Source: Bigelowiella natans CCMP2755 (Eukaryota > Protista > Cercozoa). From it: a stretch of 64,000 nucleotides of DNA. The translations under genes and the position numbers were made by a program. Shown piece after piece: positions 5,790 to 64,000 of this stretch; position 1 is the stretch's first letter, and each line of letters starts with the position of its first letter. Below the pieces are notes generated by a model. That model saw only the letters and a program-made list of their open reading frames with translations. It had not been told where the DNA came from and did no database searches. Where the stretch lies: contig ADNK01002094.1 in NCBI GenBank assembly GCA_000320545.1, positions 58,878 through 122,877 of the forward strand, read 5' to 3'.

Positions 5790-8700
5790 ATACATTTGTC
5801 TAAAGCAGGCTAGCAGGGCCGGATTCTTCGGCTTTTCCTCGACTTTTTTAGTGAATGTGGAGATCATTCTGGTGGAAAGTTTGCAAGAAAAACCAGCACA
5901 CACGAAATAGCGCTAGAATGGCAACTGAAAGTTCGCTCACTGGAGTGAGCATGCGTATGTTGCTCGCAGCTCGCAGGCAAAGAAGCACACAATGCATTGA
6001 TCACAGCTGCGGATTGTTGCGCACAAAAAATCTAGAACTAGAGAAGTGTGCACGCATGCGACACGATGATCGCATGCAATGTGCACGCATCGCATGTGGA
6101 CTTTGTGTGCATGCCACAACTGTGTCAATCCCGGTAACGAGTGGGTTTTGAACAAACTGTGCTTTGCGCGTGCGGCCTGGCGCGCTCAATCGTTGCAATT
6201 GGACATTGGAAGCACACTGGAGCCTGTTTGAGGTTCAAATTTGATTTTTTTTTTTCGAATTTCAGCTTGAAAACCTCATTTTTCAACGCCTGCCAGCGGG
6301 CGAAAATTGAAAAATTCTTGCCACTTTTGAACACGCTGGCACACTTGCATTTGCGTGCCACAAGATTTGCAAGCTCATGAGGGTGTGTGCACACTAGCTT
6401 CATGGACGTGCGAAGTTTCAGCACACGCACGCAAAAAGCACACACCTGGGCGCGCGTGGGCGCGCAGGTGTGTGCTCAATGACCCTCAATTGTGCCATTC
6501 GTTACACATTTGATGCAGTTGTGGCATGTGCGCGCGCGCGTGCGCAATGTCATGCACAATGACGCAATGCGACACACGTGTCATGCACATGCATCATGTC
6601 ACTGCACGTCTAGCTGTGTCCATTGCAAACACAATGGGCAACAGTCAAGCCTTTGACAATGCCAGAACGCTCGTTTGCATGCATCTTTGATTCAATTGCA
6701 AACACTAGAACACCTCACATGCCGTGATCTAGCATTCAATTTTCACAGCAATCAACTTGTCCAGTGCGCTAGATTGCTAGGTAGCTGAAGTAGCAGTTGT
6801 GCGTCTTCCAATTGCATGCAATGATGAACAATGGATTGGGTTGAGGGTCACAACATTGCTGGATTGTCCACAAGCACAAGCACCAGCAGAAACCTGGCGG
6901 TGACACTTCAGCAGATCTAGCTGGGTGCAGTGCGCAGCCATCAAAACCTCGCTCAAATTGCAGAACCGCGGCCTCGTCTTGGAGTCTTCAGTGTGCTCGC
7001 GACAGTCCTAAGCCAAAGCTAGCTAGCCAGCAAAGCGCGCCATTCTCCAAGTGAGGTGAACTTGGAATTTTTGTCACACGATTTTGCAAATTTGTTCATT
7101 GCATGAGGAATCCACTTTGATCATGTTGGGAGACCACCCTTCTAGTCTTCTAGCCTTGCGGGATTCGTCCTTCCTGTCTGTTCTTGCAAATCGAGGCGTT
7201 TTGGCTCAGCAGTGTCGCATCCCGAAGCTAGGAAAAGCAATGATCCCTGATCATGAGGGTTCACCACTGTCTTCAGCTCATCCATGAGGTCCGGGTGAAA
7301 GTTGTCCAATGTTTGTTTTGGTCACCTCTAGATCTGCTGCGTTTGCCTCGAACCGTTGTGTTTTTGTGGTGAGGCTTTGACTTTCATCGCGTTGTCACCA
7401 CGCTTTGACCCCTTGGGAAGACCAGGGGACTAGCTAGACTAGTGGAGGAGGTGAAATTTTCACGTTGGCCGGGTTCCCAGAGTGGCAAAATCGTTGTCAC
7501 CGTCTTCGTGTTTGTGTGCGATTTAGCCAGTGTCGTCAACAGTGCGAAGATCCCACGCACGCCATGGATGCAATCTTCATCGATGCATCTCTACCGTGTG
7601 TCCATGGCCTCATGCAAAGGGCCATGTAGCGTGCGCACGTGTGAACACACGTAGTTTCTACACCTGTTCTCAAGTTCCATTCCTGTGTCTTTTGTCCACC
7701 ACATGTGTCAAATTGGAGCATTCATGCATGTCATTTGTTGACGTGTCACACGCATCTAGACACATCCCACAACACTGAAGCACGCACACAAAGCACACAT
7801 GAGCTCAGTCACATGTGTCCCAGAGAACAGGTGTTCTGAACCCGGGTACGCTCTGTGGCCTAAAAGGGCTACATGTGCACATGCACGTTGGCAGCGTTTG
7901 GGTGTACGTCTTCCGCCTCTACATGACGCAGTGCCTCCATTGGCACCTTTCTCAAGCCCTGGAACATTCCAGCATCGAAAGGCAACCTGCCTCATGAACC
8001 TCTTCAAGTTGCCAATCACAAAGAATTCGCAGGACAACAGGTTGGAGGGGAGTGCTGCTGCCCGCAGCACGGACATGGTCTGCATGTCTAGATGTGTCCG
8101 CGTCCAAGCACGGGCTAGCAGCCAGCTAGCTACGTTTCCCCGCATCGCACTGCCACATCCTAGACGCCTCCGCCCAATGTCAATGTCTCCTACCAACCCA
8201 AACGCGTACGTTGCCACGTACAGCATGCAGGATGACATTGCGTGCGCTGCATCATGCATGCGCAGCTAGCCTAGAGCCTAAACGTGCGTGCATGTGTCAC
8301 ATGTGCAGAGTCTACATGCATTGTGTGCATGCTGCAGGGCTCGTCTGGGCGTACCCACAAATTTGACATGTGACGCTTCCACACGTGTGCGTACCAAAGT
8401 GAACATGTTGTGAAGCACGGGCACAGTGCGCCCGCCAGAGCCCAAATGTGCACGTGTCGTGCACGGAGTCCACACGCACGCGTCATCATGTGCGTGCATC
8501 GCAGGGCTCTGGGCTAGCATGCGCACTGCCTGATCGACCAATCACAGCGTGACACATGCGGCTGCTAGTGTCTGCAGCTTCGCCTTGCTGCAACCTCCAC
8601 TTGCAGCGGTTTCACGCCTGCATGCTGCACACATGTCATGCCACGTGCGCACACGTGCACACAAATGAAACGCTCTGCGTGCACACCACGCACGGCCCCA

Positions 8701-9069: not shown

Positions 9070-11348
9070 CTAAATCCTTTCAATGAGACTAAAGTCTAGA
9101 GGGAAACCGAGCAGCCTTCTATGCTCCATATATTCCTCTGGGTTAGGGAAAGCATATGTTTCGGTTCCTACTTTTCCATCCTCAGCCCACCATATGGTAG
9201 CCTCCCCGTTTTTCCCCCAGTAACATCCCTTAACAACCTTAATGTCAGACCCGTCTAGTGGCGCTCCGTGCTTCGCCCTGTGCTCTAAATATTCTCTTGA
9301 ATTTTTAAATGTGACTTCTGCAGGTGGATAAGCAGTTTTTAGATTCCAATGGACATGTGGTAGTTTCTCTGCCCTCCAATAAAATCCCTTTGGTAAAATC
9401 CTTTGAATGAGAGTACCATCCTCAGGAAAACCGAGCAGCTTTCTATGATGCAAATATGTTTGTGCGTTGGGGAAGGCAATTGTCTCGGTTCCTGCTTTTC
9501 CATCCTCAGCCCACCATACGGTATCCTCCCCGTTGTACCCCCAGTAACATCCTTTAACAATCTTAATGTCAGACCAATCTTCTGGCATTCCGTGCTCCGC
9601 CCTGTGCTTCATATATTCTTCTGAACTTTGAAATGTGACTTCTGCAGGTGGATAAGCAGTTTTTTCATTCCAATGGACATGTGGTAGTGTCTCTGCCTTC
9701 CAGTAAAATCCCTTTGATATCCTTTGAATGAGAGTACCATCCTCAGGAAAACCGAGCAGCTTTCTATGATGCAAATATGTTTGTGCGTTGGGGAAGGCAA
9801 TTGTCTCGGTTCCTGCTTTTCCATCCTCAGCCCACCACACGGTATCCTCCCCGTTGTACCCCCAGTAACATCCTTTAACAATCTTAATGTTAGACCCGTC
9901 TAGTGGCGCTCCGTGCGCCCTCCTGTGCACTAAATATTCTCTTGAATTTTTAAATGTGACTTCCGCAGGTGGATAAGCAGTTTTTTCATTCCAATGGACA
10001 TGTACTAGGTTCTCTGCCCTCCAGTAAAATCCCTTCCGCATTTCAACGATTCCTTTCCAGTCTTTCTCGAAACCATGATTGAAACGGTGTTCCATATACT
10101 CTTTCTCATCTTCAAAAGCTACATGTTTGACACCAGGTACCGATTGTGAGAAATAGACTGTGACATCTTCCACGTGCTTCCAATAGCATCCAAATGTTGG
10201 GATATTAATAACCTTAACCGAATCATCTGTCCAACCTTGGTTCTTATAATGAACAATGAAATCGCGTGAATTTAAAAACTTAATATCTGTCTGATCAGGT
10301 TTTCCCGTCATCGACCAGTAGACCCAAGGTGCCTTTCCAATGTTGAAGTAACAGCCCTTAGCAGGTGGTAGTGTGGTTATAGCACTCCAGTCTTTTGGCC
10401 ATCCATTTTGAGCACGATGTTTGAAGTATTCTTCCGGGCTATAAAATTGGACACTACACAACACACACAAGCACAAACACAAATTAGAATGGTGTGATCA
10501 ACTAGAGACAACAAAGGTATATTCTCACTCTTTGGTGCCTGCTTTATCGGCTGCTGAGGCCCAGAAGACCGTTGGAATATCTTCGTATTTCCAGTAGCAT
10601 CCTGCCTTTTCCACCCCCTCGGCTTTGACTTCTGCTTTGACTTCTGCTCCTGATTTGGTGTCGGTGATGGAGGGTTGCACTGCCTGCATTTTTTGCAGAC
10701 GGAGTTGCTCGAGCTGCTGAGCGAGCAGGTCAGCCTAAAGAAGGAAGAAAAGTAACAAGTAGTAGTATCCTGGTTGTCAGCACAGCTGTATTCTTACATC
10801 AAGTACACAGTAAAGAATTTTCAATTCAATTCAGTATTCATCGGAAATCTAAATCTATCCATTCATTTCACCTGTAATTTGGCTCTTTTGTCTGCCTCGG
10901 CCTTTTCTTTGGCAAGTTTCTCTGCTTCGGCTGCGCGACGAGCTGCCTCCCTCTTCTGTCTTTCTTCCAGTAATGCTTGAGCTTTTGCAGCAGCATTTTC
11001 TAGGACCACTTCTGTGTCTTCGTGACATTCCCCAATAATTGCTTCATTGACGGCGCCTATTATATATGATGATGATGATGTGCAAAAGAGAGTGATAAAG
11101 GGGTATTATTTTCTACTACTACTTTTCTATTCAATCCAAAGCTACTATGTATCTATTTTTTTTTACCACTACTTTCCTATTCAATCCAAAGCTACTAGGT
11201 ATCTACTACCTTCCTTCATGTATCGTATGATCAGATTTTTGCCAGATTTGTGGTTATTTAGAGGATCAAATCCAAAATATTGGCTACAATCCATGCCCTT
11301 GGCAAATTTAAGGGTTCCATTGTCAGCCTAGGGTAGAATAGAGAGGGT

Positions 11349-14989: not shown

Positions 14990-15620
14990 ATCCCGATGTT
15001 GACAATATGAGTGGTGGTAACATAGTCAGAGCTAGAGAGGGAACCTCTTAGATGATTGGCTGTTCTCTGATAACACGCTACGCTGCCACTGGTACGAGCG
15101 GCAATAGCGTCATGCTAGCATGGTGATTCGCGCGACAGCAGCCAATATCTAGATGTGTTCATAGTTGTGCATGCATCGTACTTGCTATAGCGCACACATA
15201 GCGCCCCATCTAGTTATCTAGTTATGCCTAACGATACCTAAATCTGGAGATGTCTTTGCTAGCTAGCATGTAAGTCCGCGGACAAACATGGAGAGGCATC
15301 AGACGACGTAGGCTATATTAGCTTTTGACACTGATTAGTGCATGTTGCCTTGTCTTTTCTAGTTATTCATTGTGCTTCGAACGCAAAGCGAACATCGGAC
15401 GATACATACCTACACCTAGCACCTAGCTACCTCTAGACATACGACTGTGTGTGTTGTATATTTTTGAAACTTTCTAAAACGTGTACATGAGCTGTGTGGT
15501 TATCACATCTCTGATATGTGCTCGCTGGGCCGAGCTATTACCTAATAAGCGGTGCCGGTTAAGCTACGTGCAGGCTCTGCTCTACCTTCTGCGTGGAGGC
15601 GGGTTTGCAATGTGCTTTGG
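14990..15620. repeat. Island 2: CTAG-rich degenerate sequence between convergent genes
   Basis: NNNN-CTAG-NNNN at 15028, 15111 and 15214, and many other CTAG sites. TpA is only mildly depleted here. Confidence 0.55.
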
Positions 15621-26400: not shown

Positions 26401-27275
26401 TACTTTATTACGATTTAGAGTATGAGTCCTGCCTCAACCTATTTACGTCCTCCATCGTAGCACCAGGGGTTGCTGCCCTTAACATTGCTGGAATAGTTCT
26501 TTCCTTCCAATGGTATTGTGATGAATGTGACAAGGATTCGTTGTTCAACTACATTCTGCTATTGGCCGCTGTTTATACGGTCACACTGGCTTACCATTTG
26601 GGCAATATTTTGTTCCGTTCAATTTTGTTCTGTGCGTTCATTAATTGTTGTTGGTGCTGTAAACCTTGCATGAAGAGAACTGCACAATATATAGATTATG
26701 GCCTTCCAAATCCGGTATGTATGCTTCATGCATAAGAACGAAATAACACATAGTTTTCGATAAGTTATCAAGAATATTTTGAATTTCCGTCTTGTTTGTA
26801 TATCTCTTCCTTACTGTGCAGCATGATATCTATCATCAACTTCACTTTTATTTTGATGAGCAAATTATCTTCGTAGGTATTTCATTTTATGATGAAGCAC
26901 TTTGTGTTGCGAGAAAGTCTTGCCACTACGATCACAAAAAATAGAGAGATGCGGCGACGAGAGCGAATGCGTCTAAGAGCTAGAATAGACGATCTTCAAG
27001 CACAAATACTCCGGAAAAAGTCTGCACTGAAAGATTTGCACCGTTTAGATGTGAATGAGATAAAAGCTCGTCAAGCCATCAACAACGTAATTGGCCTCAC
27101 AGACAAGATATTCAGGACTGATGCCTATGGTAATGAAAAGAAGGGAGGCGGAGATCAGAAGGGAGTTTATCAACCATTGAGCCAACATGAAGCTAAGCAT
27201 GAATTAAAATCTGCAGCAACAAACAGGAAAGGAGAAAATAGTGGGATTGAGGCATTGCATACAGTCGATAAATGA
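23469..27275 (+). CDS. Hypothetical membrane protein: helical K/E-rich N-terminus, multi-TM Cys-rich segment, C-terminal coiled coil; multi-exon
   Basis: ATG gives MDHKDSEER. ORFs at 23598-24476, 26073-26735 (hydrophobic helices) and 26889-27275 are joined by GT-AG introns. Confidence 0.7.
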
Positions 27276-27289
27276 TCAAGATTTGAAAT

Positions 27290-27372
27290 GCTATGTGTGT
27301 GCAAGTACAAACTCACACAAATGCAGATGGCTAGATGGCTAGATGGTACGAGCGAGCATGCATGGAACAAGC

Positions 27373-27413
<41 letters not shown>

Positions 27414-29720
27414 TGTTTGTGTGTGTGTGTGTGTGTGTGTACATTGACCGTGCAGCGTGTGGCCAACCTGCCCGACCACCCGTCCACAAATGATGCACCA
27501 ACTCCGTCAAACCTGTAACGAATCGTGAGAGTGAGCATTTCGAAGCTTTTGCGCGCGACCAAGCGCGCAGCACGAACAATGTCTCCTGGACTTTCTGGCA
27601 CAACACCTACTGTTAGCGTTTCTCGCAACCACATTGCGCTAGAATGGATGCCACGCACACACGCGCTGCGAATGTTAGCCGCAGCACTGGTTTTCGATCC
27701 AATGCGTCAAATTGATCACAACTCCGACAAATGTGCAAAACTGCGTGGTGATGTGACATGCGAGCCAATGTTTAGTAGCAATGTGCCTAAATGACTAACA
27801 ATCACACTGCGACATGGCCTAGCTAGCTAGCTAGCTAGCGCTTGTCGTCCTGTCATTGGTGGCTGCAAGCAGTGGCCGCTGCATTGCACATGCAGCTACA
27901 TGCATGAGGATGACCATGGCATGTTCAACGCAATTTGCAATCAATTGATCAACAACATCCGTCTTGCATGTGCGTCCAGACTTTGAGCTAGCTAGCTAGC
28001 TAGTTAGCTAGAGACGTGCTGCAGATGCCATTAGCACATGGTTGCATTCAATGCATGACGATGATGATGCAAGGCAGAATGAAACCTGGATGGCTCAGCT
28101 TCCACATCTGTGTGCAGTTTCATTGCGCAGCACTTGCAACACAATCGTGACAATGTGGGCCATTGCAGATTCATGTCCACAAAACTGATGCCCTGTCAAA
28201 GAAATGACATTTGCCGAGCATGCACGAGCAAACAAGCGAAGGAAAAGGCTCACACCGCTTGCATGCTTGCGGGTCGTTCCACATCGAGGCCAAACCCGGT
28301 CACAAATGGGTTTCGCATGTTTGCAGAGCGCTTCAAGGGCATTTTTTGCGTGCAATCCGTCCGCAACCGTCGAAAACACTTTCTGAGTCGGCGGAATGTC
28401 GAAAAAATGAAAAAATTCAAAATCTCAGCTCAAAAACCTCGATTTTTTGACCCCTCACAACGTGCATTGCGGAGAAAATTCTCATGATTTTGGTCAGAGA
28501 TGCAGCCGACGCACGTGTGCAATGCGAGCAAGTGAGGACATGTCCGTTTGCAATGGAACTAGCTTTGCAGACAGCCGGAAGCGCAATGCTCAAATGTCAA
28601 AATTGATCGAGATGTGACGCGTTGAAATTTTGAAATTGGGGCATCACTGCTACATCTAGACATGCATGCAACCACAGGATGCACATGACGTGTCATGAGT
28701 GCAGAGGGGTTTTGACGCATTGGAGACACTGCGCAGCTGGTTTTCGGTCAAAGAAATTGGTCGTGTGCAAACGCGCGCGCAGAATTTTGGTTCAAAACGC
28801 CGAGGTGTGGTGCGCACAAGCGGCGCGTGGTGCGGGGCAGCGCGATCGAGCAGAAGTCGCACCTCGGGGGGGCCAGGGGGGGGGGGGGAATGCGAATGAA
28901 AAAAATTCAACCGTGCCAAAAGTTTCCAAAGGACCCCTGCTTGACATCTAAATCGAGTTTGCGCGAAAAAAATGGGTCAATTTTTTTTTTTTTCAATTTT
29001 CGCAAAGTTGTGACCGGTTTGCTAGTTTGGCCTCGATGTGTCAGAGCATGGCAAACTAGCCATTTGCGCGCCAACACACATCGGCCATGCGCTGGGCACA
29101 CAGCATCCCAGCTAGCCAGCAACATCCCACTGCGCAGTCACAGTCTAGCAGTGGCACAAAATTCGGGAAAAATGCCCGACATTTTCCCCTGACAATTGCG
29201 ACAATCTAGCACTACTAGCTTGAAGCTAGACTGCATAGCCCGACTGCATGTCGCGGAACGATCACCGAGGCAATCTAGCAATGCTCCTGGACCAGTGGAA
29301 GTTGCAACTAAGCGTTGCAACCTCGCATGCTCTAGATGCTAGCATGCCCCCTGCTAGCCTGCCATCATCATGTCATTGAGCATGCAAGTTGCATGCAAGC
29401 CTCCATGTCTAGATGTGACTTACCAAACTGTAGACAAGTGTAGTAGATGTGACCTAACCCTAAGCAACCATGCTAGCATGCCTGCATGAAAACACGAGAA
29501 ACAATCTAGCAATGAAGCACAACATGCACACCCATGAGCGCGCATGCTAGCATGCGCATGCGCGTTCGCACCTGCATGTGCTCATAGTGGTCGCACACAA
29601 ACTGACTAGCTGACCACGCATCGCTTCTGCGCTGCCTCACGAATTGACGCGCATGCGATGCCAAAGAGTTACGCGTCACAATTATCAACAAAAGCTATAG
29701 CTGGGCGCCCGTGCTATAGC
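27290..29720. repeat. Island 3: TpA-depleted transposon debris between convergent genes
   Basis: Contains MITE B, (CTAG)5 at 27819, and at least 12 NNNN-CTAG-NNNN motifs. Confidence 0.85.
28280..29040. mobile_element. MITE family B (CAC...GTG ends, 2-bp TSD tc; CMC/EnSpm-like, non-autonomous)
   Basis: TIRs cacatcgaggccaaacccggtcacaa / ttgtgaccggtttg[ctagtttg]gcctcgatgtg. tc flanks both ends. The second copy is inverted at 41431-42623. Confidence 0.9.
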
Positions 29721-29976
29721 TGCTGCAGCATCCGCAACAATAGACCTTCATGTTTGCGTGAGAATGCTGGGATCAAGATCAGATATGAGCAAAAACACTG
29801 TATATAATGATGCTATGGCATCAACGAAATAGTCTTATTCATCATGCCAAAGTCAATTATTGCTTTACAGCAGGAAATCATATCCACTTTCACAGTTTTG
29901 GCCGGTGCACGAACCACGTAATGTTGCTAATCTTCGAAGTTTGATATATACATATGATACCGAGAAGTAATCTCGA

Positions 29977-32900
29977 TTATTTTTTCACACGAGTAGCAGG
30001 TTCATCAATGCTAGATCCATAACCAGGTTGCAGACCGCCCGGAGAAGTTTCGGACTTTCTGCTTACATCGGCAGCTTTTTCATCAATTTCAACCAAAAGA
30101 TCTCCTCCTTGTACCTGGTCACCACTCTTAACCATAATTCTCTTTACCAGGCCTGTACATGGAGCTGTCACAACCTGCATTTAAATATATGTACATATAA
30201 ATATGTGCGCGCGCGTGTGTATGTGTGTGTGTACATCAGGACAACGACGATCATGATGTTAAAATAAATAGAACTAACACCATACTACTATCTAACTTTA
30301 CTGCTCTACTTCACACGTAGTACGTACAGTTTCCATCTTCATCGCACTCAGAACTACAAGGTTTGTATCTTTTGCAACGCTTGTCCCCTCTTTAACTTTG
30401 ACAGAGAGTACTTGTCCTGGCATTGGTGCTCCGACCGATCCCAGCTCTGCTTTATCTGCCTTCTCACGTGCCATACTGCCATCTGTAGATGATTTGTCCC
30501 TAACGGTGATGCTAATCGGTGTTCCATTCACATCAAAGAAAACGTGCTTGTTCCCTGCATCATCTACATCAGTCATAGCAACCAGCTTGATCACGAATTC
30601 TTTGCCTTTCCTTATCGAAACTGTTAGCTCCTCTCCAAGCTTCATTGGTGAGAAATATGCGTAGCTTGGAATCTTCTCCACTCGTCCAAATTCTTCTTGA
30701 AAAGCCATGTACTCCTTGAACACTGCAGGGTAGAGAGCTGAAGAAAGAACATCCTTAAATGTGATACTATTCCCGTATTTGTATTCAAGTTTTTTCCTTT
30801 CTTGATCAAAATCGTAAGCATCAAGATCTGCACCGGGTCTTCCTTGTACAGGAAGGAATGCATTGGATGTGCCTGTTTTCAATACTTTAGAACGCAAAGG
30901 TTCAGGAAATCCACCTACAGGATGACCAAGGTATCCTTGAAAGAATTCGATAACAGATGAAGGAAAAGAGAGAGTTTCTGCTTGTGCAAGAAGGTCTTCT
31001 TCTGTTTCAATGCCGTTCTGAACCATAAAGAGGGCTAAATCGCCAACAACTTTCGAGGAAGGAGTCACTTTTACGATATCTCCCAACATCATGTTCGCAT
31101 TTCGATATGCTTTCTTGATCGCTGGCCATTGATCTGCTTGTCCCATTGAAAATGCTTGAAAATGTAAGTTGGTATACTGACCTCCAGGAATTTGGTGTTG
31201 ATAGACATCTGCAGATCCAGATTTCATCGTGACAGTGCATTCAAACGGAGCATATTGAGGCCTTACTCCTTCCCAATACTCGCTTAAGGCTGTGATTCCT
31301 TCGTTATTCATCCCAGTTTCAATCCCTTCAGCAGCTAAAGCAGCATTCAAAGCTCCTAGAGAAGGCTGTGCCGTCATTCCAGACATTGAATCTATACTAG
31401 CATCTATTGCATCAGCTCCTGCTCGTACAGCCTCCAGCATAGCAGCAACACCATTACCAGAAGTATCATGACAATGCACGTGGATTGGAAGATCAGGGAA
31501 TTCCTTCCTTATTGCACCTACCAACATATTAGCTGCCTTTGGCTTCAATAACCCTGCCATATCTTTAATTCCAAGGACATGAGTGCCTCCCTTCACAAGT
31601 TCTTCAGTAAGACCAAGATAGTAATCGAGATTGTACTTGTTGGCATTTGGGTCAGAAACATCCCCAGTATAAGATATTGCAGCCTCAATAATGCCTCCAG
31701 CTTCTCCAACAGCATCCATTCCTAGTCTCAGATTGTCAATGTAGTTGAGCGAATCAAAAACCCGGAAAACATCCATTCCTGATCTGACAGCTTGATCACA
31801 GAACTTGAAGACAACATTGTCTGGATACGCTGTATATCCGACAGCATTAGCTCCTCTTAGAAGCATTTGAAATGGAATATGAGGCACTGCTTCTCTCATC
31901 TCCTCTAATCTATCCCAAGGACATTCACGCAAAAATCTAAGAGCAACATCGAAGGTGGCCCCTCCCCAGTTTTCAATGGAGAATGCATTCCTCATGATTG
32001 ATCCCGTAGCAGGAGCTATAGTCATGATGTCTTTGGTTCTTACTCTCGTAGCAAGGAGAGATTGATGAGCATCTCTCCAGGTAGTGTCGGTGAACAATAC
32101 ACCCTTATTCTCTCTTACAGCCTTGGCAAATGCTACAGCTCCTCCTCGTACATAAACATCCCTTAGACCTGTCAGTTTACTACTCTCTGGATGCTGCTGT
32201 TGGCTACTACTACTACTACTATTACTACTAGTACCACTTTTTGAATCAATTTCTGAAGTGGAGAGGAGGCGGGGAATAGGGGGGAGTGTCCTTGCAGGAA
32301 CTGCATCTGTTCCAATTGGGGTAAGAGGTCCATTAACCACTTGCTCACCGAGAAACTTCACTATTGACATAGCCATTGAAACTTGATTGTCGACATCGAA
32401 TAGATCAGGATTTTTCTCGATAAAACTTGTATTAACGGTGCCGTTTCTGAACTCCTCGTTTTCCAATACCTTCTTCACAAATTCAATATTGGTCTTGACA
32501 CCTCGTACACGTGATTCACTGAGAGCTCTATGCAGCTTGACACAAGCATCTTGATGATTTCGTCCCTTAGCTGTGATTTTTGCCAGGAGAGAGTCATAAT
32601 AAGGACTGATAACTAGACCCTGGTACCCACTCTGATCTATGCGTATTCCCATTCCCTCTCCAATAAGATAAAGTTCCAATCGCCCAGTGTCAGGAGCAAA
32701 GTTAAGGTTAGGATCTTCTGTTGTCATTCTACATTGAATTGCACAGCCAGACATTCCAACGACATCTTGAGATAATCCCAAATCAGGGAGAGAATAACCC
32801 TCTGCGACTCGTAGCTGTGTTTGTACAATATCAATACCTGTGATCTCTTCTGTTACTGTATGCTCAACTTGTAAACGAGCATTCATCTCAATAAAGTAGT

Positions 32901-34612
32901 GATTTCCATTCTCATCCACCAGGAACTCGCATGTTCCAGCATTTTGATAAGAAGAGGCTTTAGCGAGGGCAATAGCATCATTACAAATATTTTTTCTTTG
33001 CTGTTCAGTGATGAGAGGGGCAGGAGCTACTTCCACGATTTTCTGATGTCGCCTTTGCACAGAGCAATCTCGCTCAAAGAGATGAACGTGATTTCCATAT
33101 CTGCCAAGAAAATAGAAGAAGAAGAAGAAGAAGAAGAAGAAGAAGAAGACCAAATAAGTGTACACAGATTATATTTTTCCATCGTGTAGAAAATCTATAG
33201 TATTCAAAGACTATTAGAATACGTTTGTCGTACAAAAAGGAGACGATGAAATCATTCTATCTTTTGTTGTTTGTCCCTCTTCGTCTTCTTCTTCTTCTTC
33301 TTCTTCTTCTTCTTTTTCTCTTTCAACACACAGAAATGTTGGATAGAATACATACTTATCTCCGATGATTTGAACCTCAATATGTCTTGGGTTTTGCACG
33401 AATTTCTCAAGAAACATGCTGCCATCACCAAAAGCAGCTCTAGCTTCTGAGGATGCTGCAAGAAATCCCTCTGAAAGCTCATCTTTATTCTGACATAGAC
33501 GCATACCACGACCCCCTCCTCCAAAGGCAGCTTTAGCCATAATTGGATATCCAACTTCATCAGCAAATGCAAGAGCTTCCTCGACATTTCTTACTACACC
33601 ATCACTGCCAGGCACAACAGGAACATTAGCCTTAAATGCAAGGTCTCGAGCTGCTGTTTTGCTTCCCATTTGATCGACAACTTGGCTGTTTGGACCAACA
33701 AATATGATACCCGCTTGTTCGCATGCAGCAGCAAAGTCACCGCGTTCAGAGAGAAACCCTGATTATTACATAATGTTGCTTTTCTTATTTTGTAATTTTT
33801 TGCAAACCATAGAAAAGATGCTACTGCCTTGTGACTTTACTTTGTGTCTTCTACGCTATCTTATTTGGACGAAGGGAAAATTTTGTATTATAAATGATAA
33901 TGATAGTAAGTAATCCTGTTTGTTACTACCATATCCAGGGTGAATAGCATCAACTCCGTGAGCAAGAGCAATCTCAATCAGCTCATTTATGTTTAAATAA
34001 GCATCGACTGGGCCTATATAGTATAGTATTGGGATAATAAGGGATCATCAAATGTTAGCAAACAGGAAAATATATCTTCATTGTTGTTGAAATGATGATG
34101 ATAACAATATATTTTCTTCATGATAGAATGGATTGACGACGGTTACGATGACCATGATTATAGATTATGTGAAGTAATGATGCTGATAACCGTGAAAAAT
34201 AAAAAATAATAGCTTGCTAAGATACTATGTGAGGAATGATTCATGGCTAAAATCAACAATTTGATCATTTTGAGTTCAAGACATATTATGTTGATATCTG
34301 ACGACAAAGCAACCTAGATCTCCGTTGGCATTCAACTGAAAGGATTCGTTCGCTTTTCGAACATGAAGGTTTCTTCGATCTTCTTTAGGATATACAGCAA
34401 CCGTCTCCATCCCGAGCTCCCTGATAGACAGAAAGAGCTACAAGGTAAGCACTACGATGTCCGTATTCATGTTTGAGTACGACAATAACCATCATCACCT
34501 GGCAGCTCTGAAAATACGAATGGCAATCTCTCCACGATTAGCCGCCATAATCTTTTTGATAGGGCGAATTTCTCTTCCCGTTGACATCTGTCTTGCCACA
34601 AGTCCACCTAAA

Positions 34613-40771: not shown

Positions 40772-41430
40772 CGATTACCATGCCGCAGTAGTAGCTACAG
40801 GTGTCTTCATAATTAGAGAACATTAACCATGATAGCTATAAATATCATCATACATGGAGAGCATCACCCGTCGCTGCACACATTCTAGCATTGTTCCAGC
40901 CGAGAAAGAACACAGCAGATGCCATGAACCACTCATTGATGAGCAATTTGAAGTATGATACCTGCTACATTGCATGACTTAGCAAGAATGTTCATCAAAA
41001 CTGTAGTGGCTCGACTTTAACACAGACTCATTCTCACCATGCTGCACGTTGTCTTCGCATTTGTCTGCGCACACATTGCAAATGATCGAATGTCGTACTT
41101 GTCATATCACAACGTTGTGCGACATCTGCTACACAATTAGCTACTTAGGCATGGCCACTGCTTCTAGACTCATCATGATTAGGCATTGCGTGCAGCCTCC
41201 GGCGCCGGCTAGACAAGCTAGCAAGCGCATTGTCATTGTGTGATGTGCCCGAGTTGCACGTGCCATGATGTCTAGATGTGTGAGAGGCTCCATGACTAGG
41301 GCTGTCCTAGTGTCTTCCGTTTCGCATGCTAGCAACTGCTAGACTGTGCTGCTGGTTGCGATGCTTGCATGCATGTCTAGATCGATGTGTGCGGCGTCTG
41401 CTGACAGATCACGACATGCTAGCATGACAA

Positions 41431-42623
41431 CACATCCAGGCCAAACCGGTCACAACTTTGCGAAAATTGGAAAAAAAAAGAATTGACGCATTTTTTTCGC
41501 GCAAACTCGATTTAGATGTCAAACAGGCTAGCAGGGGTCCTTTGGAAACTTTTGTCACAGTTGAGTTTTTTCCATTCGCATTCCCCCCCCCTAGCCCCCC
41601 CCTAGCCCCCCCGAGGTGCGACTTCTGCTCGATCGCGCCGCCCCGCACCACGCGCCGCTTGTGCGCACCACACCTCGGCGTTTTAAACCAAAATTCTGCG
41701 CGCGCTTTTGCACAAGAATGATCTCTTTGACCGAAAACCAGCTGCGCGGTGTCTCCAATGCGTCAAAACCCCTCTGCACTCATGACACGTCATGTGTGTC
41801 CTGTGGTTGCATGCATGTGGCAGTGATGCCCCAATTTCAAAATTTCAACGCGTCACATCTCGATCAATTTTGACATTTGAGCATCGCGCTTCCGGCTGTC
41901 TGCAAAGCTAGTTCCATTGCAAACGGACATGTCCTCACTTGCTCGCATTGCACACGTGCATCGGCTGCATCTCTGACCAAAATCATGAGAATTTTCTCCG
42001 CAATGCACGTTGTGAGGGGTCAAAAAATCGAAGTTTTTGAGCTGAGATTTTGAATTTTTTCACTTTTTCGACATTCCGCCGACGCAGAAAGTGTTTTTTG
42101 ACGGTTGCGGACGGATTGCACGCAAAAAATGCCCTTGAAGCGCTCTGCAAACATGCGAAACCCATTTGTGACCGGGTTCACAACTGTGTCAAGTGTGTGA
42201 CGAATGGTGTGAATTTTCAATTGAGGGTCATTGAGCACACACCTGCGCGCCCACGCGCGCCCAGGTGCATGCTTTTTGCGTGCGTGTGTGCTGAAACTTC
42301 GCACGTCCACAAAGCCAGCTAGCCAGTGTGCACACACCCTCATGAGCTTGCAAAACTTGTGGCACGCTCATGCAAACAATGCGCTAGCGTGTTCAAAAGT
42401 GGCAAGAATTTTTCAATTTTCGCCTGCTGGCAGGCGTTGAAAAATGAAGTTTTCAAGCTGAAATTCGAAAAAAAAAAATCAAATTTGAACCTCAAACAGG
42501 CTCCAGTGTGCTTCCAATGTTCAATTGCAACGATTGAGCGCGCCAGGCCGCACGCGCAAAGCACAGTTTGTTCAAAACCCACTCGTTGCCGGGATTGATG
42601 CAGTTGTGTTTGGCCTCGATGTG
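41431..42623. mobile_element. MITE family B copy (inverted relative to 28280-29040) carrying a nested MITE A; TSD aa
   Basis: Ends are cacatccaggccaaaccggtcacaa and tttggcctcgatgtg, with aa on both flanks. 41431-42178 aligns to the reverse complement of 28290-29040. Confidence 0.9.
42179..42608. mobile_element. MITE family A copy inserted in the TIR of MITE B; TSD tt
   Basis: TIRs cacaactgtgtcaa / ttgatgcagttgtg. The empty site ggccaaacccgg is visible at 28288-28299. Confidence 0.9.
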
Positions 42624-42999
42624 AAACACGATGGAGATTTTGGTCCGCCATCGATCATTGCAACGTGCACAAAACAACAAATCCTCGCAACATTTGACGT
42701 GCATGTGTTGCAGCCTCTGTGCTGGAGTGCACTGCTGTGCAATCTAGCTAGCAATCCTCGGCGTGCTGCGCATGCTTTTTGTGCGTAACGCGTTCGATGA
42801 TCAATTGAGCTAGTGAGTCCAAACATCTCTGCATCACGTACAGCCAATGATGCATGAGGATGCAGCGTCTAGATGTGTGCTCATCCAGTCTGCTCATCAT
42901 CACACAAGGAACTGTCTGAAGATGCTTGCCGCATCAATGACTACACAAGACCTTGCAGGGGCCTAGGGGCGGCTGCTTATCTCTCAATTACACAGTAAA

Positions 43000-51999: not shown

Positions 52000-53320
52000 C
52001 CTGTGATAGCCCTCCATCGTTTGGGAACAGCATGTCGTAGGCACCTCGTGTTGACATTCCAGGAAGTTTCTACAACAAACCGCAGATCTAGTAATAAGTT
52101 GTTCATCATCGATTATGTTTCTGCATCAAACCGCAGATCTAGTAATAAGTTGTTCATCATCGATTATGTTTCTGTAACAAACAGCAGATCTAGTAATTTA
52201 TTGTGTTTTATGTATTATCATGCATGGTCATCAGTAAGTTGTTCATCATCGATCATGTTGCTTCATGTCATGCCTTTGCCCTTCGACTTTTCGCAGAAGA
52301 TGTATGTGCTAAGTATTTCCTACAACAGCAGTATTTAGAAATACACGTAGTGACTGGTCTTAATTCTCTTAACATGGTACTGTTTGAGATATGTTGTAAT
52401 AACAATAAGATTGGTGCTGTTACTACCGAATCAGCAGCCAACTTTGTAGCTGCCATACTTCATTCAGTTTTCGAGCCCCTTTTGGGGACGTTACCCCGTT
52501 TTCACGTTCCTTGAACAACAAATATCGTTACTCGAAAGAGAAAGGGGGAAATTCAGATGAGGGATATTGTTTGCTTGACACTTCTTATTAAACGCATATG
52601 TTGGCAATCACGTTCTACTGTAATACCGGATAAACTTCAAGCACGTGCCGAGCTTCATGAGCAAATTTCAGCTCTAAATTCAAGAGACCTTCTTCTTTAC
52701 AATCCTTAAGCATGGAGAGGATAAGTAATCTCTTGAGGGCATAATGAAGCATGTAAACATTGAATCATTCATGGTGACAATTATCAATACCTATTTTAAC
52801 AAAATACCTTTGCCAAATCCTCTAATAGGAGGTTCCCTGCTTGGATGCTTTCTCGCAGTCCTCCAATATCCTCCTGAAAAATATCGATCGAGGGAGGGAG
52901 GATTATTAACTTGCCTAACCAACATTAGAACTTCCTGGCTTCTTCATGCTCTCTCTCCTTCTCTCTCTCCCCCCTCTGTCTCTCTCAGTAATGAATAGTG
53001 TTGCTAAACACTCTGAAAGAAGCAGTGCTTGAAGAATGGTTCCAATGTGGAGGGTCATTTCTATATTGCAACAGCTCATCATCACATACTCTAGTACTAT
53101 GGAACAAACAAGAAAGTTGGCAAAGTGTGCATGTACACTTGCTTTGTGACCATGCTAGCAGCTGTTCTATTGATAACAGTTTTCCTTTCTCTATCTCCTG
53201 TCGCCGATCCCCCTCCTTCTTCAACCCTCCTTGCAGATATCGCGATTTTGTCGATTATAAGCTCGTCCTCGTCTTCCTCCTCTTCCTCCTCCTTCTCCTT
53301 GCATGACCGTTACCTTTCAT
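43000..53320 (-). CDS. Long coiled-coil protein gene or genes with small exons in microsatellite-filled introns; structure approximate
   Basis: E/K/L-rich minus-strand exons such as IENIELRTQKDAAEKSLLETKQNLRITFQ, MYEKRVLELRKRHHSEKQGIK, VSRFEEEICILKKKLEG, KRKEALEKSAKLEG and EDIGGLRESIQAGNLLLEDLAK. Confidence 0.55.
52076..52260. repeat. Intronic 54-bp tandem repeat (about 2.5-3 copies)
   Basis: caaaccgcagatctagtaataagttgttcatcatcgattatgtttctg is repeated. Confidence 0.8.
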
Positions 53321-55739: not shown

Positions 55740-57160
55740 GAGATGTCTATTGTGCCGTGTAGTTGTGCAACCCATCATCGATATCTGCTTGTCTGTTGCT
55801 AGACGCAAAAGAAGCGCCTGTGATGTCAACTTGCTGCTCCACAATGATGGTCAAAGCTCGAGTGACATGCGTACATGTCAACAGCACATTCCTTGTGATT
55901 GTAGTGCAATGTGACACACATCTAGACATGAACAACATGAATTGCCAGTCAAACAGAGCATTTTCCAAAACACCTACGAAACCACACAATTTCACACAAA
56001 ACAAACGCGCAACAATCGCACAATGCAATTTGGTTTGCAAAGCACACCAATGCTGTTTGCTTCGTCTCTGTGCGTACCATCACAAATTGCTTGGCGACTT
56101 TGCCCACCAAAGCAATTCATTTTCCATCGCACATGCAACATGTGCAATCATTAAGCTTCACTGTGAGCACTGAAATGATATATTTGCTTTGATGAACACA
56201 CTGAATGCAATTTGCTTCACTGTTTACGTGCAAACAAACACTGTCGAGTTGCAAACCGCTTTGACAAAGCTAGAAAGGGTCAGGGTTAGGGTTAGGATCA
56301 GGGTCTACAGTCAGGGTTGGGGTCAGAGTCTCAGGGTCAGGTCAGGGCCAGGGTTGGGGGTGCATGCGATGAAACGAGTGCTTTCACCAAGCAAAGCTGA
56401 AACAAACAGCCCAGAATCGAGTCGTGTGCGTGCATGATTCTACTTCCAACATCGAGAAGATGCACACTCATTGGTTTGCCCTTTCTTCTCAAATCGTTGC
56501 AGATTCACAGCATGGCACGCACAGCCTGATCTAGCTGATGATGAAGCTCATCAAGCCAAAATGGTGATGATGACAACCTGGATGACATCAGTGACAGAGA
56601 TGCATCATGATGATGAGCGAGTCAATGATGTGACAACTCAAGATGTCGATTGTTGCACGGCAATTCCTAGATTCTCGAGGAAGCATCCAATACGCAGCCT
56701 CATCAAGCAAAATGTTGCATGATGATCCGCTAATGCCATGAGATCCATGTAGCGATCTAGTGACGCACTCTGCCAGACCGCCACACTGAACTTCTATATC
56801 CCTAGCTAGCGTCACGTGCACGCATCTGTCCAGGCTAGCAGGGCCTCTGCAGACGATGTCTATGCTAGCAGCAGGCTTTCATGAAATGATGTCCACACGC
56901 GTCACATTGCGTTCATTGCACGCATCATGAATGCCCAAAACGTGATCACATTTTGTCAGCATGTGAATGACTTGTGAATGTCAGCACAACACTCGCTCAT
57001 TGCAATCGCGTCCACAGCTCCAGAGCTGACAGCGCTAGAGCGGCTTGCGCACGCACCTTGCAAAAGTCATGCTAGCATGGCCTGGGTTGCTAGTTGAATG
57101 GATGAAAGCCTGCAAGCACCATCACTCGCATCAAAGCCAAAAAGGGACTAAAACATGTCA
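55740..57160. repeat. Island 5: TpA-depleted debris between convergent genes
   Basis: NNNN-CTAG-NNNN at 55918, 56266, 56663, 56831, 57031 and 57068, plus degenerate telomere repeats. Confidence 0.8.
56277..56360 (+). repeat. Degenerate interstitial TTAGGG array
   Basis: gggtcagggttagggttaggatcagggt...cagggttggggtcag...cagggccagggttggggg. Confidence 0.75.
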
Positions 57161-63899: not shown

Positions 63900-64000
63900 T
63901 AGGGTTAGGGTTAGGGTACGGGTTAGGGTACGGGTTAGGGTACGGGTTAGGGTACGGGTTAGGGTACGGGTTAGGGTTCGGGTTAGGGTACGGGTTAGGG
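63900..64000 (+). repeat. Telomeric/subtelomeric repeat, alternating TTAGGG and TACGGG
   Basis: (ttagggtacggg)n continues to the window end, with the G-rich strand running 5'->3' outward. Confidence 0.85.

What the first reader, a model, noticed from the sequence alone, without database searches (positions are those of the whole stretch)
27327..29613. Systematic 8-bp insertions in repeats: a constant CTAG flanked by a 4-bp target duplication (NNNN-CTAG-NNNN)
Seen: about 30 perfect cases with different 4-mers, all in the intergenic islands. They are 5806 cagg, 6034 agaa, 6701 aaca, 8084 atgt, 15028 agag, 15111 catg, 15214 ttat, 27327 atgg (twice), 28652 acat, 29018 tttg, 29108 ccag, 29141 cagt, 29271 caat, 29350 cctg, 29405 atgt, 29469 catg, 29502 caat, 29543 catg, 29602 ctga, 41214 caag, 41268 atgt, 41303 tgtc, 41335 actg, 41415 catg, 41524 cagg, 42315 ccag, 42806 tgag, 55918 acat, 56266 aaag, 56663 attc, 56831 cagg, 57031 agcg and 57068 catg. 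A chance match is about 1/256 per CTAG at uniform composition. I did not notice the pattern at CTAGs in the genes. Inference: this is either the stereotyped excision footprint of a very active, repeat-targeting transposon with 4-bp TSDs (for example CT...AG ends), or a dedicated enzyme doing linker-insertion mutagenesis. Each event is a frameshift and adds a TAG triplet on both strands, which would efficiently inactivate transposon ORFs. I know of no described system with this signature.
Basis: partly seen in the sequence, partly recalled or inferred. Interest (0 to 1): 0.95.

Follow-up and report, generated by a model that had tools for sequence, protein, structure and literature searches.

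The report
CTAG insertion scars past gene ends
The alga Bigelowiella natans has tens of thousands of identical 8-letter insertions (CTAG plus a copy of the 4 letters beside it) in the short DNA stretches behind its genes; they look like marks left by a jumping gene that landed and left, but that gene is still not found and no paper I could find describes the marks.

Summary
In the window, 44 of 220 CTAGs have the form NNNN-CTAG-NNNN, against 1-2 expected.

Copies of one MITE family show that the 8 bp are derived insertions. Thirteen of 18 scars have an intact "empty site" in other copies.

Genome-wide, CATG-CTAG-CATG occurs 3,828 times (control 7). That is 36% of all 256 possible cores between two CATGs. 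A further 1,013 read CCAG or CTGG, which are scars eroded by the alga's published TpA mutator.

- The target has a mirror-symmetric preference (78% of duplications read M-N-N-K).
- The duplication is 4 bp, and 5 bp in about 8% of cases.
- The scar makes a new preferred target, which gives (CTAG)3 runs and double hits.
- About 7% of CATG sites in the islands carry a scar.
- The scars are identical in assemblies of 2021 and 2025 runs.

Best reading (about 50%): excision footprints of an unidentified cut-and-paste element with 4-bp target duplication and CTAG ends. No such element turned up in about 230 kb of this genome. None of the transposon families I detected fits.

"Repeat-targeting" and "ORF-killing" are not supported.

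This scan has reported the same scars before, on other DNA of this genome.

The parts
27327..27346 (.). double scar ATGG-CTAG-ATGG-CTAG-ATGG (same target hit twice)
   Evidence: The same double-hit form is common genome-wide for CATG.
27819..27838 (.). (CTAG)5 run, read as repeated insertion into the CTAG core of an earlier scar (and/or slippage)
   Evidence: (CTAG)3 and (CTAG)5 between identical duplications are seen genome-wide. CTAG fits the preferred target C-W-W-G.
27988..28011 (.). (CTAG)4-TTAG-CTAG run
   Evidence: The 148 bp between the two runs is single-copy, so it is not a mobile unit.
28280..29052 (+). MITE copy (CACATCGAGG... inverted ends, 2-bp duplication TC) carrying two private scars
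   Evidence: Copies and ends. Alignment. An empty paralogous site lies in L017.
28652..28663 (.). scar ACAT-CTAG-ACAT, private to this MITE copy
   Evidence: Absent from the 93%-identical copy at 41442-42178 and from other copies.
29018..29029 (.). scar TTTG-CTAG-TTTG, private to this MITE copy
29108..29119 (.). scar CCAG-CTAG-CCAG
29141..29152 (.). scar CAGT-CTAG-CAGT
29271..29282 (.). scar CAAT-CTAG-CAAT
29329..29342 (.). variant scar with 5-bp duplication: ATGCT-CTAG-ATGCT, nested in an older CATG scar
   Evidence: contig position 88208
29350..29361 (.). scar CCTG-CTAG-CCTG
29405..29416 (.). scar ATGT-CTAG-ATGT
29469..29480 (.). scar CATG-CTAG-CATG
29502..29513 (.). scar CAAT-CTAG-CAAT
29543..29554 (.). 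scar CATG-CTAG-CATG
29602..29613 (.). scar CTGA-CTAG-CTGA
   Evidence: The region 28992-31500 is identical in contigs of a 2021 and a 2025 run.
5806..8095 (.). island with 4 scars (5806 CAGG, 6034 AGAA, 6701 AACA, 8084 ATGT). It holds MITE A at about 6115-6523.
15028..15225 (.). small intergenic patch with 3 scars (AGAG, CATG, TTAT) and normal TpA content, so not hypermutated
40881..42970 (.). island with 12 scars (40881, 41214, 41268, 41303, 41335, 41415, 41524, 41587, 41598, 42315, 42806, 42959). It holds the second MITE copy (41442-42178, minus strand) and MITE A (42218-42608, minus strand).
55918..57079 (.). island with 6 scars (55918, 56266, 56663, 56831, 57031, 57068)
53087..53098 (.). 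isolated TACT-CTAG-TACT outside an island. It may be a chance match.
30298..33165 (-). last exon of the pyruvate carboxylase gene. Its 3' end faces the 27.3-29.7 kb island.
   Evidence: Pfam. A 99%-identical 1220-aa protein sits on a 3,999-nt transcript-sized contig, so its untranslated ends total only about 340 nt. The nearest scar lies about 685 nt past the stop.

Best explanation
The scars are excision footprints of a cut-and-paste DNA element that has not been identified.

Inferred mechanism:
1. A two-fold symmetric transposase or integrase joins the element to target DNA with a 4-bp stagger (5 bp in about 8% of events). It prefers sites of the form S|M-W-W-K|S, such as G|CATG|C.
2. Gap repair duplicates the 4 bp.
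3. The element begins and ends with CTAG. When it leaves, each flank keeps those four letters, either as a 3' overhang (as in Tc1/mariner elements) or as a terminal microhomology.
4. Because CTAG is its own reverse complement, the two ends pair perfectly and are ligated. That gives one uniform product: NNNN-CTAG-NNNN.
5. Each scar makes a new good target (G-CTAG-C), so scars pile up.
6. The events are confined to short DNA stretches just past gene 3' ends.
7. Scars have built up over a long time and are slowly eroded by the alga's TpA-to-CpA/TpG mutator.

Shown here: the insertion polarity, the constant core, the duplication length, the symmetric target preference, the saturation of sites, the erosion and the stability between runs.

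Inferred only: the existence of the element, its CTAG ends and the excision chemistry.
For: (1) Derived 8-bp insertions. Two 93%-identical MITE copies in the window differ by four such indels, two in each copy. In 9 copies of the family there are 18 scars. Thirteen have the unscarred form in 1-7 other copies, and only one site is shared by three copies.

(2) The core is constant and specific. In 166 kb there are 118 cases against 2.2 expected. Genome-wide there are 3,828 CATG-CTAG-CATG out of 10,653 CATG-NNNN-CATG.

(3) The target preference is mirror-symmetric, as expected of a dimeric enzyme. With n=107: position 0 is C 57% / A 31%, position 3 is G 50% / T 36%, T is avoided at -2 and -1, A is avoided at +4 and +5. 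Seventy-eight per cent read M-N-N-K against 25% expected. The mirror correlation is 0.74.

(4) The duplication length is fixed at 4, with a minor 5-bp class of 8 clear cases, while the core does not vary.

(5) The logic matches known footprints. [quoted passage not shown] An example is TACAGTA / TACTGTA for Sleeping Beauty (PMC6943129).

(6) Re-hits behave like independent insertions into preferred sites. About 7% of CATG sites in islands carry a scar. Of the 50 distinct structures listed from 477 of the form CATGCTAG-N(0-30)-CTAGCATG, about 40% are double hits and about 16% are (CTAG)3.

(7) The scars are real, fixed DNA. The densest stretch is identical in contigs of a 2021 and a 2025 run.
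Against: No resident element was found.
- Scans for 4-bp duplication plus CTAG...CTAG or CT...AG ends with inverted repeats gave nothing. These covered the whole 122.9-kb contig, 13 other island loci and 10 transposon loci, and also allowed TpA-eroded ends.
- No recurrent sequence follows CTAG except CTAG itself.
- None of the 50 listed structures out of 477 short CTAG...CTAG structures between CATG duplications holds a recurrent inner remnant of element ends.

Pfam models for piggyBac, Tc1/mariner (DDE_3), MULE and IS4/IS5 transposases find nothing in the genome. The families I did detect do not fit:
- hAT, whose duplication is 8 bp by established knowledge; one was noted by the scan in another window, s1-759506, not checked here.
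- CAC...GTG MITEs with 2-bp duplication.
- An integrase element whose one visible end reads AGAGTCTCC.
- LTR retrotransposons.
Earlier scan notes add Harbinger and RAG1-like relics; their usual duplications are 3 and 5 bp (established knowledge, not measured here).

Real transposon footprints are usually more varied in the core than seen here.

None of the 21 new indels in the published mutation-accumulation lines contains CTAG. By my rough estimate only about one event would be expected there.

Only about 0.25% of the genome could be read directly.
Confidence: 0.5

Rival explanations
1. Element-free scarring. A host-encoded or virus-encoded enzyme, for example a domesticated transposase or integrase working with end-joining factors, makes 4-bp staggered breaks in DNA behind genes. 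Repair always includes the same CTAG. There is no mobile element, and the scar itself is the product.
For: No element, remnant or inverted-repeat end was found anywhere I could look. The core is unusually uniform, while the variation lies in duplication length (4, sometimes 5) and in rare CTAG-only insertions without duplication, such as L010 position 2142. The scars are tightly confined to about 9% of the contig, which looks like targeting by chromatin or transcription state.
Against: No known chemistry supplies a constant four-letter insert without a template; in all known cases the template is the donor element's ends. No candidate gene was identified. Absence of the element rests on reading about 0.25% of the genome, and a few resident copies of a conservative cut-and-paste element would be enough to make all the scars.
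Confidence: 0.2
2. By-product of a retroviral-type (rve) integrase. The genome's active LTR retrotransposons or integrase-bearing virus-like elements make concerted strand transfer with a 4-bp stagger. The inserted DNA is then lost, leaving only its terminal letters.
For: rve integrases are abundant and look recently active: at least 20 copies have a 1,489-residue open frame, and a 366-residue integrase element has copies 96-97% identical. By established knowledge such integrases give 4-6-bp duplications and weak palindromic target preferences. A 905-bp insertion with a 4-bp duplication (TCAC) sits in one MITE copy.
Against: LTR ends are normally TG...CA, which would leave a TGCA core. NNNN-TGCA-NNNN is only about 2-fold over its 1/256 expectation (9 of 1,325), below the roughly 3-fold background of all cores. 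The integrase element's visible end is AGAGTCTCC, not CTAG, and an AGCT core is only about 5-fold over expectation against 54-fold for CTAG. No excision activity is known for these integrases. The LTR ends of the B. natans families could not be read here.
Confidence: 0.1
3. Misrepair of topoisomerase II breaks. Top2 cuts with a 4-bp 5' stagger. Filling in both ends before rejoining duplicates the 4 bp.
For: The 4-bp stagger and the two-fold symmetric preference fit. So does C just 5' of the cut and G at the mirror position (here C 41% at -1 and G 57% at +4), which resembles etoposide-trapped Top2 sites (PMC6813358).
Against: It explains the duplication but not the constant CTAG. Plain 4-bp tandem duplications are not seen among the private indels of the MITE copies. 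In yeast, Top2 cleavage is depleted rather than enriched between convergent genes (PMC6813358). The cytosine preference there is attributed to the drug.
Confidence: 0.04
4. Chance, simple repeats, or an assembly or sequencing artefact.
For: A few cases sit in low-complexity DNA, for example TACT-CTAG-TACT near (TAC)n runs. Plain (CATGCTAG)n tandem repeats occur in unrelated metagenome contigs.
Against: The enrichment is 20- to 50-fold over every control and about 500-fold genome-wide. More than 40 different duplicated 4-mers are involved. Independent runs of 2021 and 2025 give the same sequence.
Confidence: 0.01

Closest known systems
Canonical excision footprints of Tc1/mariner elements (Sleeping Beauty TACAGTA / TACTGTA; Tc1, Tc3, Minos)
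   Same: The architecture is [target duplication][first or last 2-4 letters of the element][target duplication]. It arises because the non-transferred strand is cut inside the element and the ends are rejoined (PMC6943129). From memory, Minos leaves four terminal letters plus TA.
   Different: Those elements duplicate only TA and their terminal letters are not palindromic, so two footprint variants and many deviants arise. Here the duplication is 4 bp of loosely defined sequence and the core is a single palindrome. No Tc1/mariner-type transposase domain (DDE_3) is detectable in the genome.
Laboratory linker-scanning (pentapeptide) mutagenesis with Mu or Tn4430 mini-transposons
   Same: After the transposon body is cut out at restriction sites in its ends and the DNA is religated, a short constant insert remains, consisting of end letters plus the target duplication (from memory). 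The outcome is formally the same as these scars.
   Different: That is an engineered two-step procedure with 5-bp duplications and 15-bp inserts. No natural counterpart is known to me.
NuwaII and IS630-type elements with CTAG-like targets
   Same: They involve the palindromes C|TNA|G or CTAG and a symmetric cut (PMC4482050; IS630 from memory).
   Different: There the CTAG-like word is the pre-existing target and only its inner letters are duplicated. Here CTAG is absent before the event and is what gets inserted.
Topoisomerase II-dependent 4-bp duplications
   Same: A 4-bp 5' stagger and a dyad-symmetric site preference (PMC6813358). The duplication signature itself is from memory.
   Different: No inserted core. 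The genomic distribution differs.
TpA-to-CpA/TpG hypermutation of B. natans (bioRxiv 10.64898/2026.01.13.699255)
   Same: It marks much of the same intergenic repeat DNA and it erodes the scars (505 CCAG plus 508 CTGG against 3,828 intact).
   Different: It is a base-substitution process. The preprint does not mention CTAG insertions, and none of its 21 new indels contains CTAG.

Membership tests
Cut-and-paste transposon excision footprint (general) | Target-site duplication retained on both sides of a short remnant | tested here: met
   4-bp direct repeat on both sides of CTAG. The unscarred form has a single copy.
Cut-and-paste transposon excision footprint (general) | The remnant equals the terminal letters of an identifiable element | tested here: not met
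   No element with CTAG or CT...AG ends was found in about 230 kb. No recurrent sequence lies next to CTAG. Coverage of the genome was only about 0.25%, so this counts as 'not found', not 'absent'.
Cut-and-paste transposon excision footprint (general) | Filled and empty alleles of the same site | tested here: inconclusive
   Only scarred versus never-hit paralogues were seen. Runs of 2021 and 2025 are identical. No other strain was available.
Tc1/mariner | TA target duplication | tested here: not met
   The duplications are 4 bp, more than 40 different words, 78% M-N-N-K.
Tc1/mariner | DDE_3-type transposase in the genome | tested here: not met
   PF13358 gives no match in the 91-Mb assembly, while the control genomes ring.
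piggyBac | TTAA target, seamless excision, DDE_Tnp_1_7 transposase | tested here: not met
   Targets are not TTAA and a scar is left. PF13843 finds nothing, although the control genomes were also silent for that model.
hAT | 8-bp duplication with variable junction letters | tested here: not met
   The 8 added letters are 4 duplicated plus a constant CTAG, not a tandem 8-bp duplication. Three hAT copies exist in the genome.
Retroviral-type integrase insertion | 4-6-bp duplication with weak palindromic target preference | tested here: met
   4 bp (5 bp in about 8%); mirror symmetry r=0.74.
Retroviral-type integrase insertion | Inserted DNA ends TG...CA and stays in place | tested here: not met
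   Nothing stays in place. A TGCA core is only about 2-fold over expectation (9 of 1,325), below the background of all cores.
Topoisomerase II duplication signature | Plain tandem duplication of the 4-bp overhang | tested here: not met
   CTAG always lies between the copies. No private plain 4-bp duplications occur in the MITE alignment.

The most novel reading that the evidence does not exclude
There is no mobile element at all. A dedicated host-encoded or virus-derived enzyme system writes a constant CTAG 'linker' with a 4-bp target duplication into untranscribed DNA behind genes, possibly guided by chromatin or small RNAs. That would be a previously unknown kind of programmed DNA-insertion or genome-marking activity, working beside the TpA mutator.
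Probability: 0.2. Interest if true: 0.95.

Novelty: new variant of a known kind. Interest (0 to 1): 0.75.

Why it matters
If the footprint reading is right, B. natans hosts, or recently hosted, a very active cut-and-paste element of an unrecognised type. It would have 4-bp non-specific duplication, palindromic CTAG ends and near-perfect scar formation, and it would aim at the DNA just past gene ends. It has left roughly 30,000-55,000 dated marks. That is a natural record of insertion-site choice at single-base resolution.

The transposase could also be a useful tool: loose target sequence, a uniform and predictable scar, and a scar that carries a stop codon on both strands.

The scars explain the CTAG / GCTAGC 'palindrome vocabulary' that other readers of this genome took for terminators or modification signals. 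They also give an internal clock for the published TpA hypermutation, because 21% of CATG-flanked scars are eroded.

If instead no element exists, this is a new DNA-writing activity in a eukaryote.

Tried and rejected
(1) Searches for the element.
- Three scans for CTAG...CTAG, CT...AG or TpA-eroded CYRG...CYRG ends with inverted repeats and a matching 4-bp duplication gave nothing.
- The 148 bp between the two (CTAG)n runs at 27839-27987 is single-copy, so it is not a MITE.
- Sequences next to CTAG do not recur.
- Short inner remnants between CATG-CTAG halves do not recur.

(2) Transposase families in the genome.
- piggyBac, DDE_3, MULE and DDE_Tnp_1: none.
- hAT: 3 copies.
- rve: LTR pol genes and a 366-residue integrase element whose end is AGAGTCTCC, not CTAG.

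(3) The two local MITE families have CAC...GTG ends and 2-bp duplications, so they are not the source.

(4) A 905-bp insertion with a 4-bp duplication in L008 has neither CTAG ends nor inverted repeats.

(5) Reads.
- The only raw-read run was 38-nt ChIP reads, too short to show 8-bp indels.
- Run X20, hoped to be another strain, is low-coverage data of the same strain.
- The single '8 left out' at 28652 is cross-mapping of the paralogous copy.

(6) Other organisms.
- The 20-letter double-hit signature finds 22 metagenome contigs, but all are plain (CATGCTAG)n repeats without other scars. It finds no viral contig.
- The closest genomic relative of the neighbouring pyruvate carboxylase gene, a 68%-identical gene on marine metagenome scaffolds, has 0 scars at 48 CTAGs.
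- Other chlorarachniophytes are held only as transcripts, which carry no scars.
- An earlier scan note (s1-750949) says one locus of a second genus shows the mark. I could not test that.

(7) Literature. No paper links CTAG insertions, 4-bp duplications and Bigelowiella. I could not retrieve the terminal sequences of the Sola, Ginger, Chapaev or Academ superfamilies.

(8) Fetching more of the genome.
Full report
WHAT THE WINDOW IS. The window is part of the nuclear genome of the chlorarachniophyte alga Bigelowiella natans. It is positions 58878-122877 of contig C1643, the last 64 kb of a 122.9-kb contig. It has about 41% G+C and many microsatellites. AT-richer gene stretches alternate with short islands of about 50% G+C.

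Of 220 CTAGs, 44 fit: 39 with a non-CTAG duplication, plus five registers inside two (CTAG)n runs. Local shuffles give 1.2 on average (maximum 5). Permuting the right flanks among the real CTAGs gives 2.1 (maximum 9). Among all 256 possible cores only dinucleotide microsatellites score as high.

I then read the rest of the contig and 13 further island loci, 166 kb in all, and removed low-complexity contexts. CTAG has 118 cases against 2.2 expected. The next cores, GCTA and TAGC, are the same scars read one register off.

Pattern counts over the 91-Mb assembly give it for the commonest duplication:
- CATG-CTAG-CATG occurs 3,828 times, against 7 for the reversed control.
- All CATG-NNNN-CATG together number 10,653.
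- So one core of 256 holds 36%.

Scaling by the share of CATG among duplications (14 of 107) gives about 3 x 10^4 scars in the genome. Scaling by density in this contig (75 per 122.9 kb) gives about 5.5 x 10^4.

THE 8 bp ARE DERIVED INSERTIONS. The window holds two copies of a roughly 740-bp MITE, at 28280-29052 (plus strand) and 41442-42178 (minus strand). Their shared core is 93% identical overall by BLAST, and 95-99% within its ungapped blocks. They differ by four indels of exactly this kind, two in each copy.

I fetched the family from the genome and aligned nine copies. For each of 18 scars I asked whether the 'healed' sequence, with the 8 bp removed, exists in other copies. It does for 13 scars, in up to 7 of 8 copies. 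The scarred form is shared at only one site, by three copies. The family's own ends are CACATCGAGG... with a 2-bp duplication. A second MITE in the window has CACAACTG... ends, also with 2 bp. The MITEs are therefore hosts of the scars, not their source.

The sequence is not an artefact. Contigs of a 2021 run and a 2025 run cover 28992-31500 with no difference and no gap.

ANATOMY OF THE EVENT.
- Duplication length. It is 4 bp in the great majority and 5 bp in eight clear cases, about 8%. One example is at window 29329-29342. Three bp occurs at close to chance level.
- Core. It does not vary, apart from forms explained by later mutation. CCAG and CTGG cores are 7-9 times over expectation locally. 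Genome-wide, CATG-CCAG-CATG numbers 505 and CATG-CTGG-CATG numbers 508, against controls of 1-3. These are the two products of the TpA-to-CpA/TpG hypermutation that a 2026 preprint measured in this species (10.64898/2026.01.13.699255). About 21% of CATG-flanked scars have been eroded, and erosion is strand-symmetric.
- Why CTAG seems 'spared'. In islands that have lost nearly all other TpA, CTAG survives because the scars are younger than the erasure, not because they are immune.
- Age. Among scars in TpA-poor DNA, 62 have perfect duplications and 25 have one mismatch, of which about 8 are expected by chance. That is roughly 3% divergence, so the scars accumulated over a long time.

THE TARGET. 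Reconstructing the 107 pre-insertion sites gives a mirror-symmetric preference:
- Position 1 of the duplication is C (57%) or A (31%), and G only 3%.
- Position 4 is G (50%) or T (36%).
- T is avoided in the two letters before the duplication, and A in the two after.
- G follows the duplication in 57%.
- Seventy-eight per cent read M-N-N-K, against 25% expected. The mirror correlation is 0.74.

The optimum is about G|CATG|C or, equally, G|CTAG|C. This has a consequence that earlier notes on this genome do not spell out: a scar creates a new optimal target.

I listed 50 distinct structures from the 477 genome-wide of the form CATGCTAG-N(0-30)-CTAGCATG. About 40% are CATG-CTAG-CATG-CTAG-CATG, which is a second hit in one of the duplicated CATGs. 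About 16% are CATG-(CTAG)3-CATG, a hit in the core. About 8% have two CTAGs. None shows a recurrent inner remnant.

Within islands about 7% of CATG sites, and a similar share of other favoured words, carry a scar. Re-hits at this frequency therefore need no local hopping.

The window shows both forms: the ATGG double scar at 27327-27346, and the (CTAG)5 and (CTAG)4 runs at 27819 and 27988.

WHERE THEY LIE. All 75 scars of the contig sit in 21 patches totalling 11.5 kb, or 9%.

The island of this finding lies between a plus-strand reading frame that ends near 27275 and the 3' end of the minus-strand pyruvate carboxylase gene at 30298. The transcript-sized contig of that gene leaves only about 340 nt for both untranslated ends, while the nearest scar lies about 685 nt past the stop.

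A crude strand assignment from long reading frames puts a gene 3' end on the left of 14 of 16 islands. The flanking pair is convergent in at least seven. This agrees with earlier scan notes but is not a proper gene-model test.

Several patches have normal TpA content, unlike the TpA-erased repeat islands. Thirty kb of young LTR-retrotransposon and integrase-element DNA has no scar.

WHAT MAKES THEM. The architecture is [duplication][constant letters][duplication]. That is how Tc1/mariner footprints are built: the non-transferred strand is cut a few letters inside the element, and rejoining leaves the element's first or last 2-4 letters between the two target copies (PMC6943129).

An element with 4-bp staggered insertion and CTAG ends would do the same. 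Because CTAG is self-complementary, the two retained ends would pair perfectly, which would explain the uniform product. This is my best explanation, at about 50%.

Its weak point is that the element is missing.
- Three structural scans found nothing in about 230 kb.
- Nothing recurs next to CTAG.
- Four transposase models are absent from the genome.
- Every family I could characterise has the wrong duplication length or the wrong ends.

A conservative cut-and-paste element needs only a few resident copies to make any number of scars, and I could read only about 0.25% of the genome. Absence is therefore not shown.

The published mutation-accumulation lines add little. None of the 21 new indels contains CTAG. 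My rough rate estimate predicts only about one event in the few thousand generations they cover.

RIVALS.
- An element-free enzyme that writes CTAG: 20%. It fits the missing element and the extreme uniformity, but it lacks any known chemistry for a constant untemplated insert.
- Aborted insertion by the abundant retroviral-type integrases: 10%. It fits the 4-bp stagger and the symmetric target, but it predicts a TGCA or AGCT core, which is not what is seen.
- Topoisomerase II misrepair: 4%. It explains the duplication and part of the site preference, but not the core or the location (PMC6813358).
- Chance or artefact: excluded.

ELSEWHERE. I found no evidence for the same process elsewhere.
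- Metagenome contigs with the double-hit signature are plain tandem repeats.
- Viral contigs have none.
- A marine picoeukaryote scaffold carrying the nearest genomic relative of the neighbouring gene has none.
- Other chlorarachniophytes are held only as transcripts.
- An earlier scan note reports one scarred locus in a second genus (s1-750949). I could not test it.

NOVELTY. No paper in the searched library describes these insertions, and the hypermutation preprint does not mention them. This scan has already reported the scars from at least nine other windows of this genome.

- the symmetric target logo;
- the 4-versus-5 duplication spectrum;
- the self-seeding of targets;
- site saturation;
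- genome-wide counts against all cores and for eroded scars;
- stability across runs;
- a wider set of exclusions.

I file it as a new variant of a known kind (transposon excision footprints). There remains a real chance, about one in five, that it is something categorically new.

Noticed in passing
window 27493-27567: A unit of about 70-75 bp is a very high-copy interspersed repeat. The own-genome search gave 143 first-look candidates, of which 40 were scored; about 35 of those match this unit at about 88-94% identity. Contig depth there is 30-40 times the flanks. Its ends and kind were not examined.
   Followed up: partly
window 63900-64000 (end of contig C1643) and 56276-56354: A 12-bp tandem repeat (TAGGGTACGGGT, 8.4 copies) runs to the very end of the contig. 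Degenerate telomere-like GGGTTA/GGGTCA units lie inside an island at 56.3 kb. This may be subtelomeric or interstitial telomere-like DNA.
   Followed up: no
window 28280-29052 (+), 41442-42178 (-), 6115-6523 (+), 42218-42608 (-): Two MITE families have CAC...GTG inverted ends and 2-bp target duplications (GA, GA, GA, AA, AC, TC; GC). This is the pattern of the CACTA/Mirage group. Copies are 79-97% identical. An empty paralogous site exists in L017.
   Followed up: partly
L008:596-1500 (G000:C778, about 130765-131669): A 905-bp TpA-free insertion sits inside a MITE copy with an exact 4-bp duplication (TCAC). It has no inverted ends, two internal 50-bp repeats, and no other copy in my sample. 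Its kind is unknown.
   Followed up: partly
L027-L030, L034 (G000:C1612, C175, C631, C1475, C200): An AT-rich element encodes a lysine-rich 366-379-residue rve integrase about 40 bp from one end (end reads AGAGTCTCC...). There are at least 10 copies, 95-97% identical, with normal TpA. It is probably one of the virophage-like or Ginger-like elements of this genome.
   Followed up: partly
G000, many contigs: An LTR-retrotransposon family has an intact 1,489-residue pol frame in at least 14 places with identical domain scores (and near-identical 1,470-1,490-residue frames in at least 20), so it looks recently active. Its LTR ends and duplication length were not read.
   Followed up: no
window 9072-10035: A 321-bp unit is repeated three times in tandem (87% identity) inside a 470-residue minus-strand reading frame. 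This is a repeat-domain protein gene next to an island.
   Followed up: no
window 41584-41612 versus 28866-28889: A poly-C/G tract in the MITE took two scars (CCCC-CTAG-CCCC twice) in one copy. In the other copy the homologous CTAG reads CCAG, a direct example of TpA erosion of a scar.
   Followed up: yes
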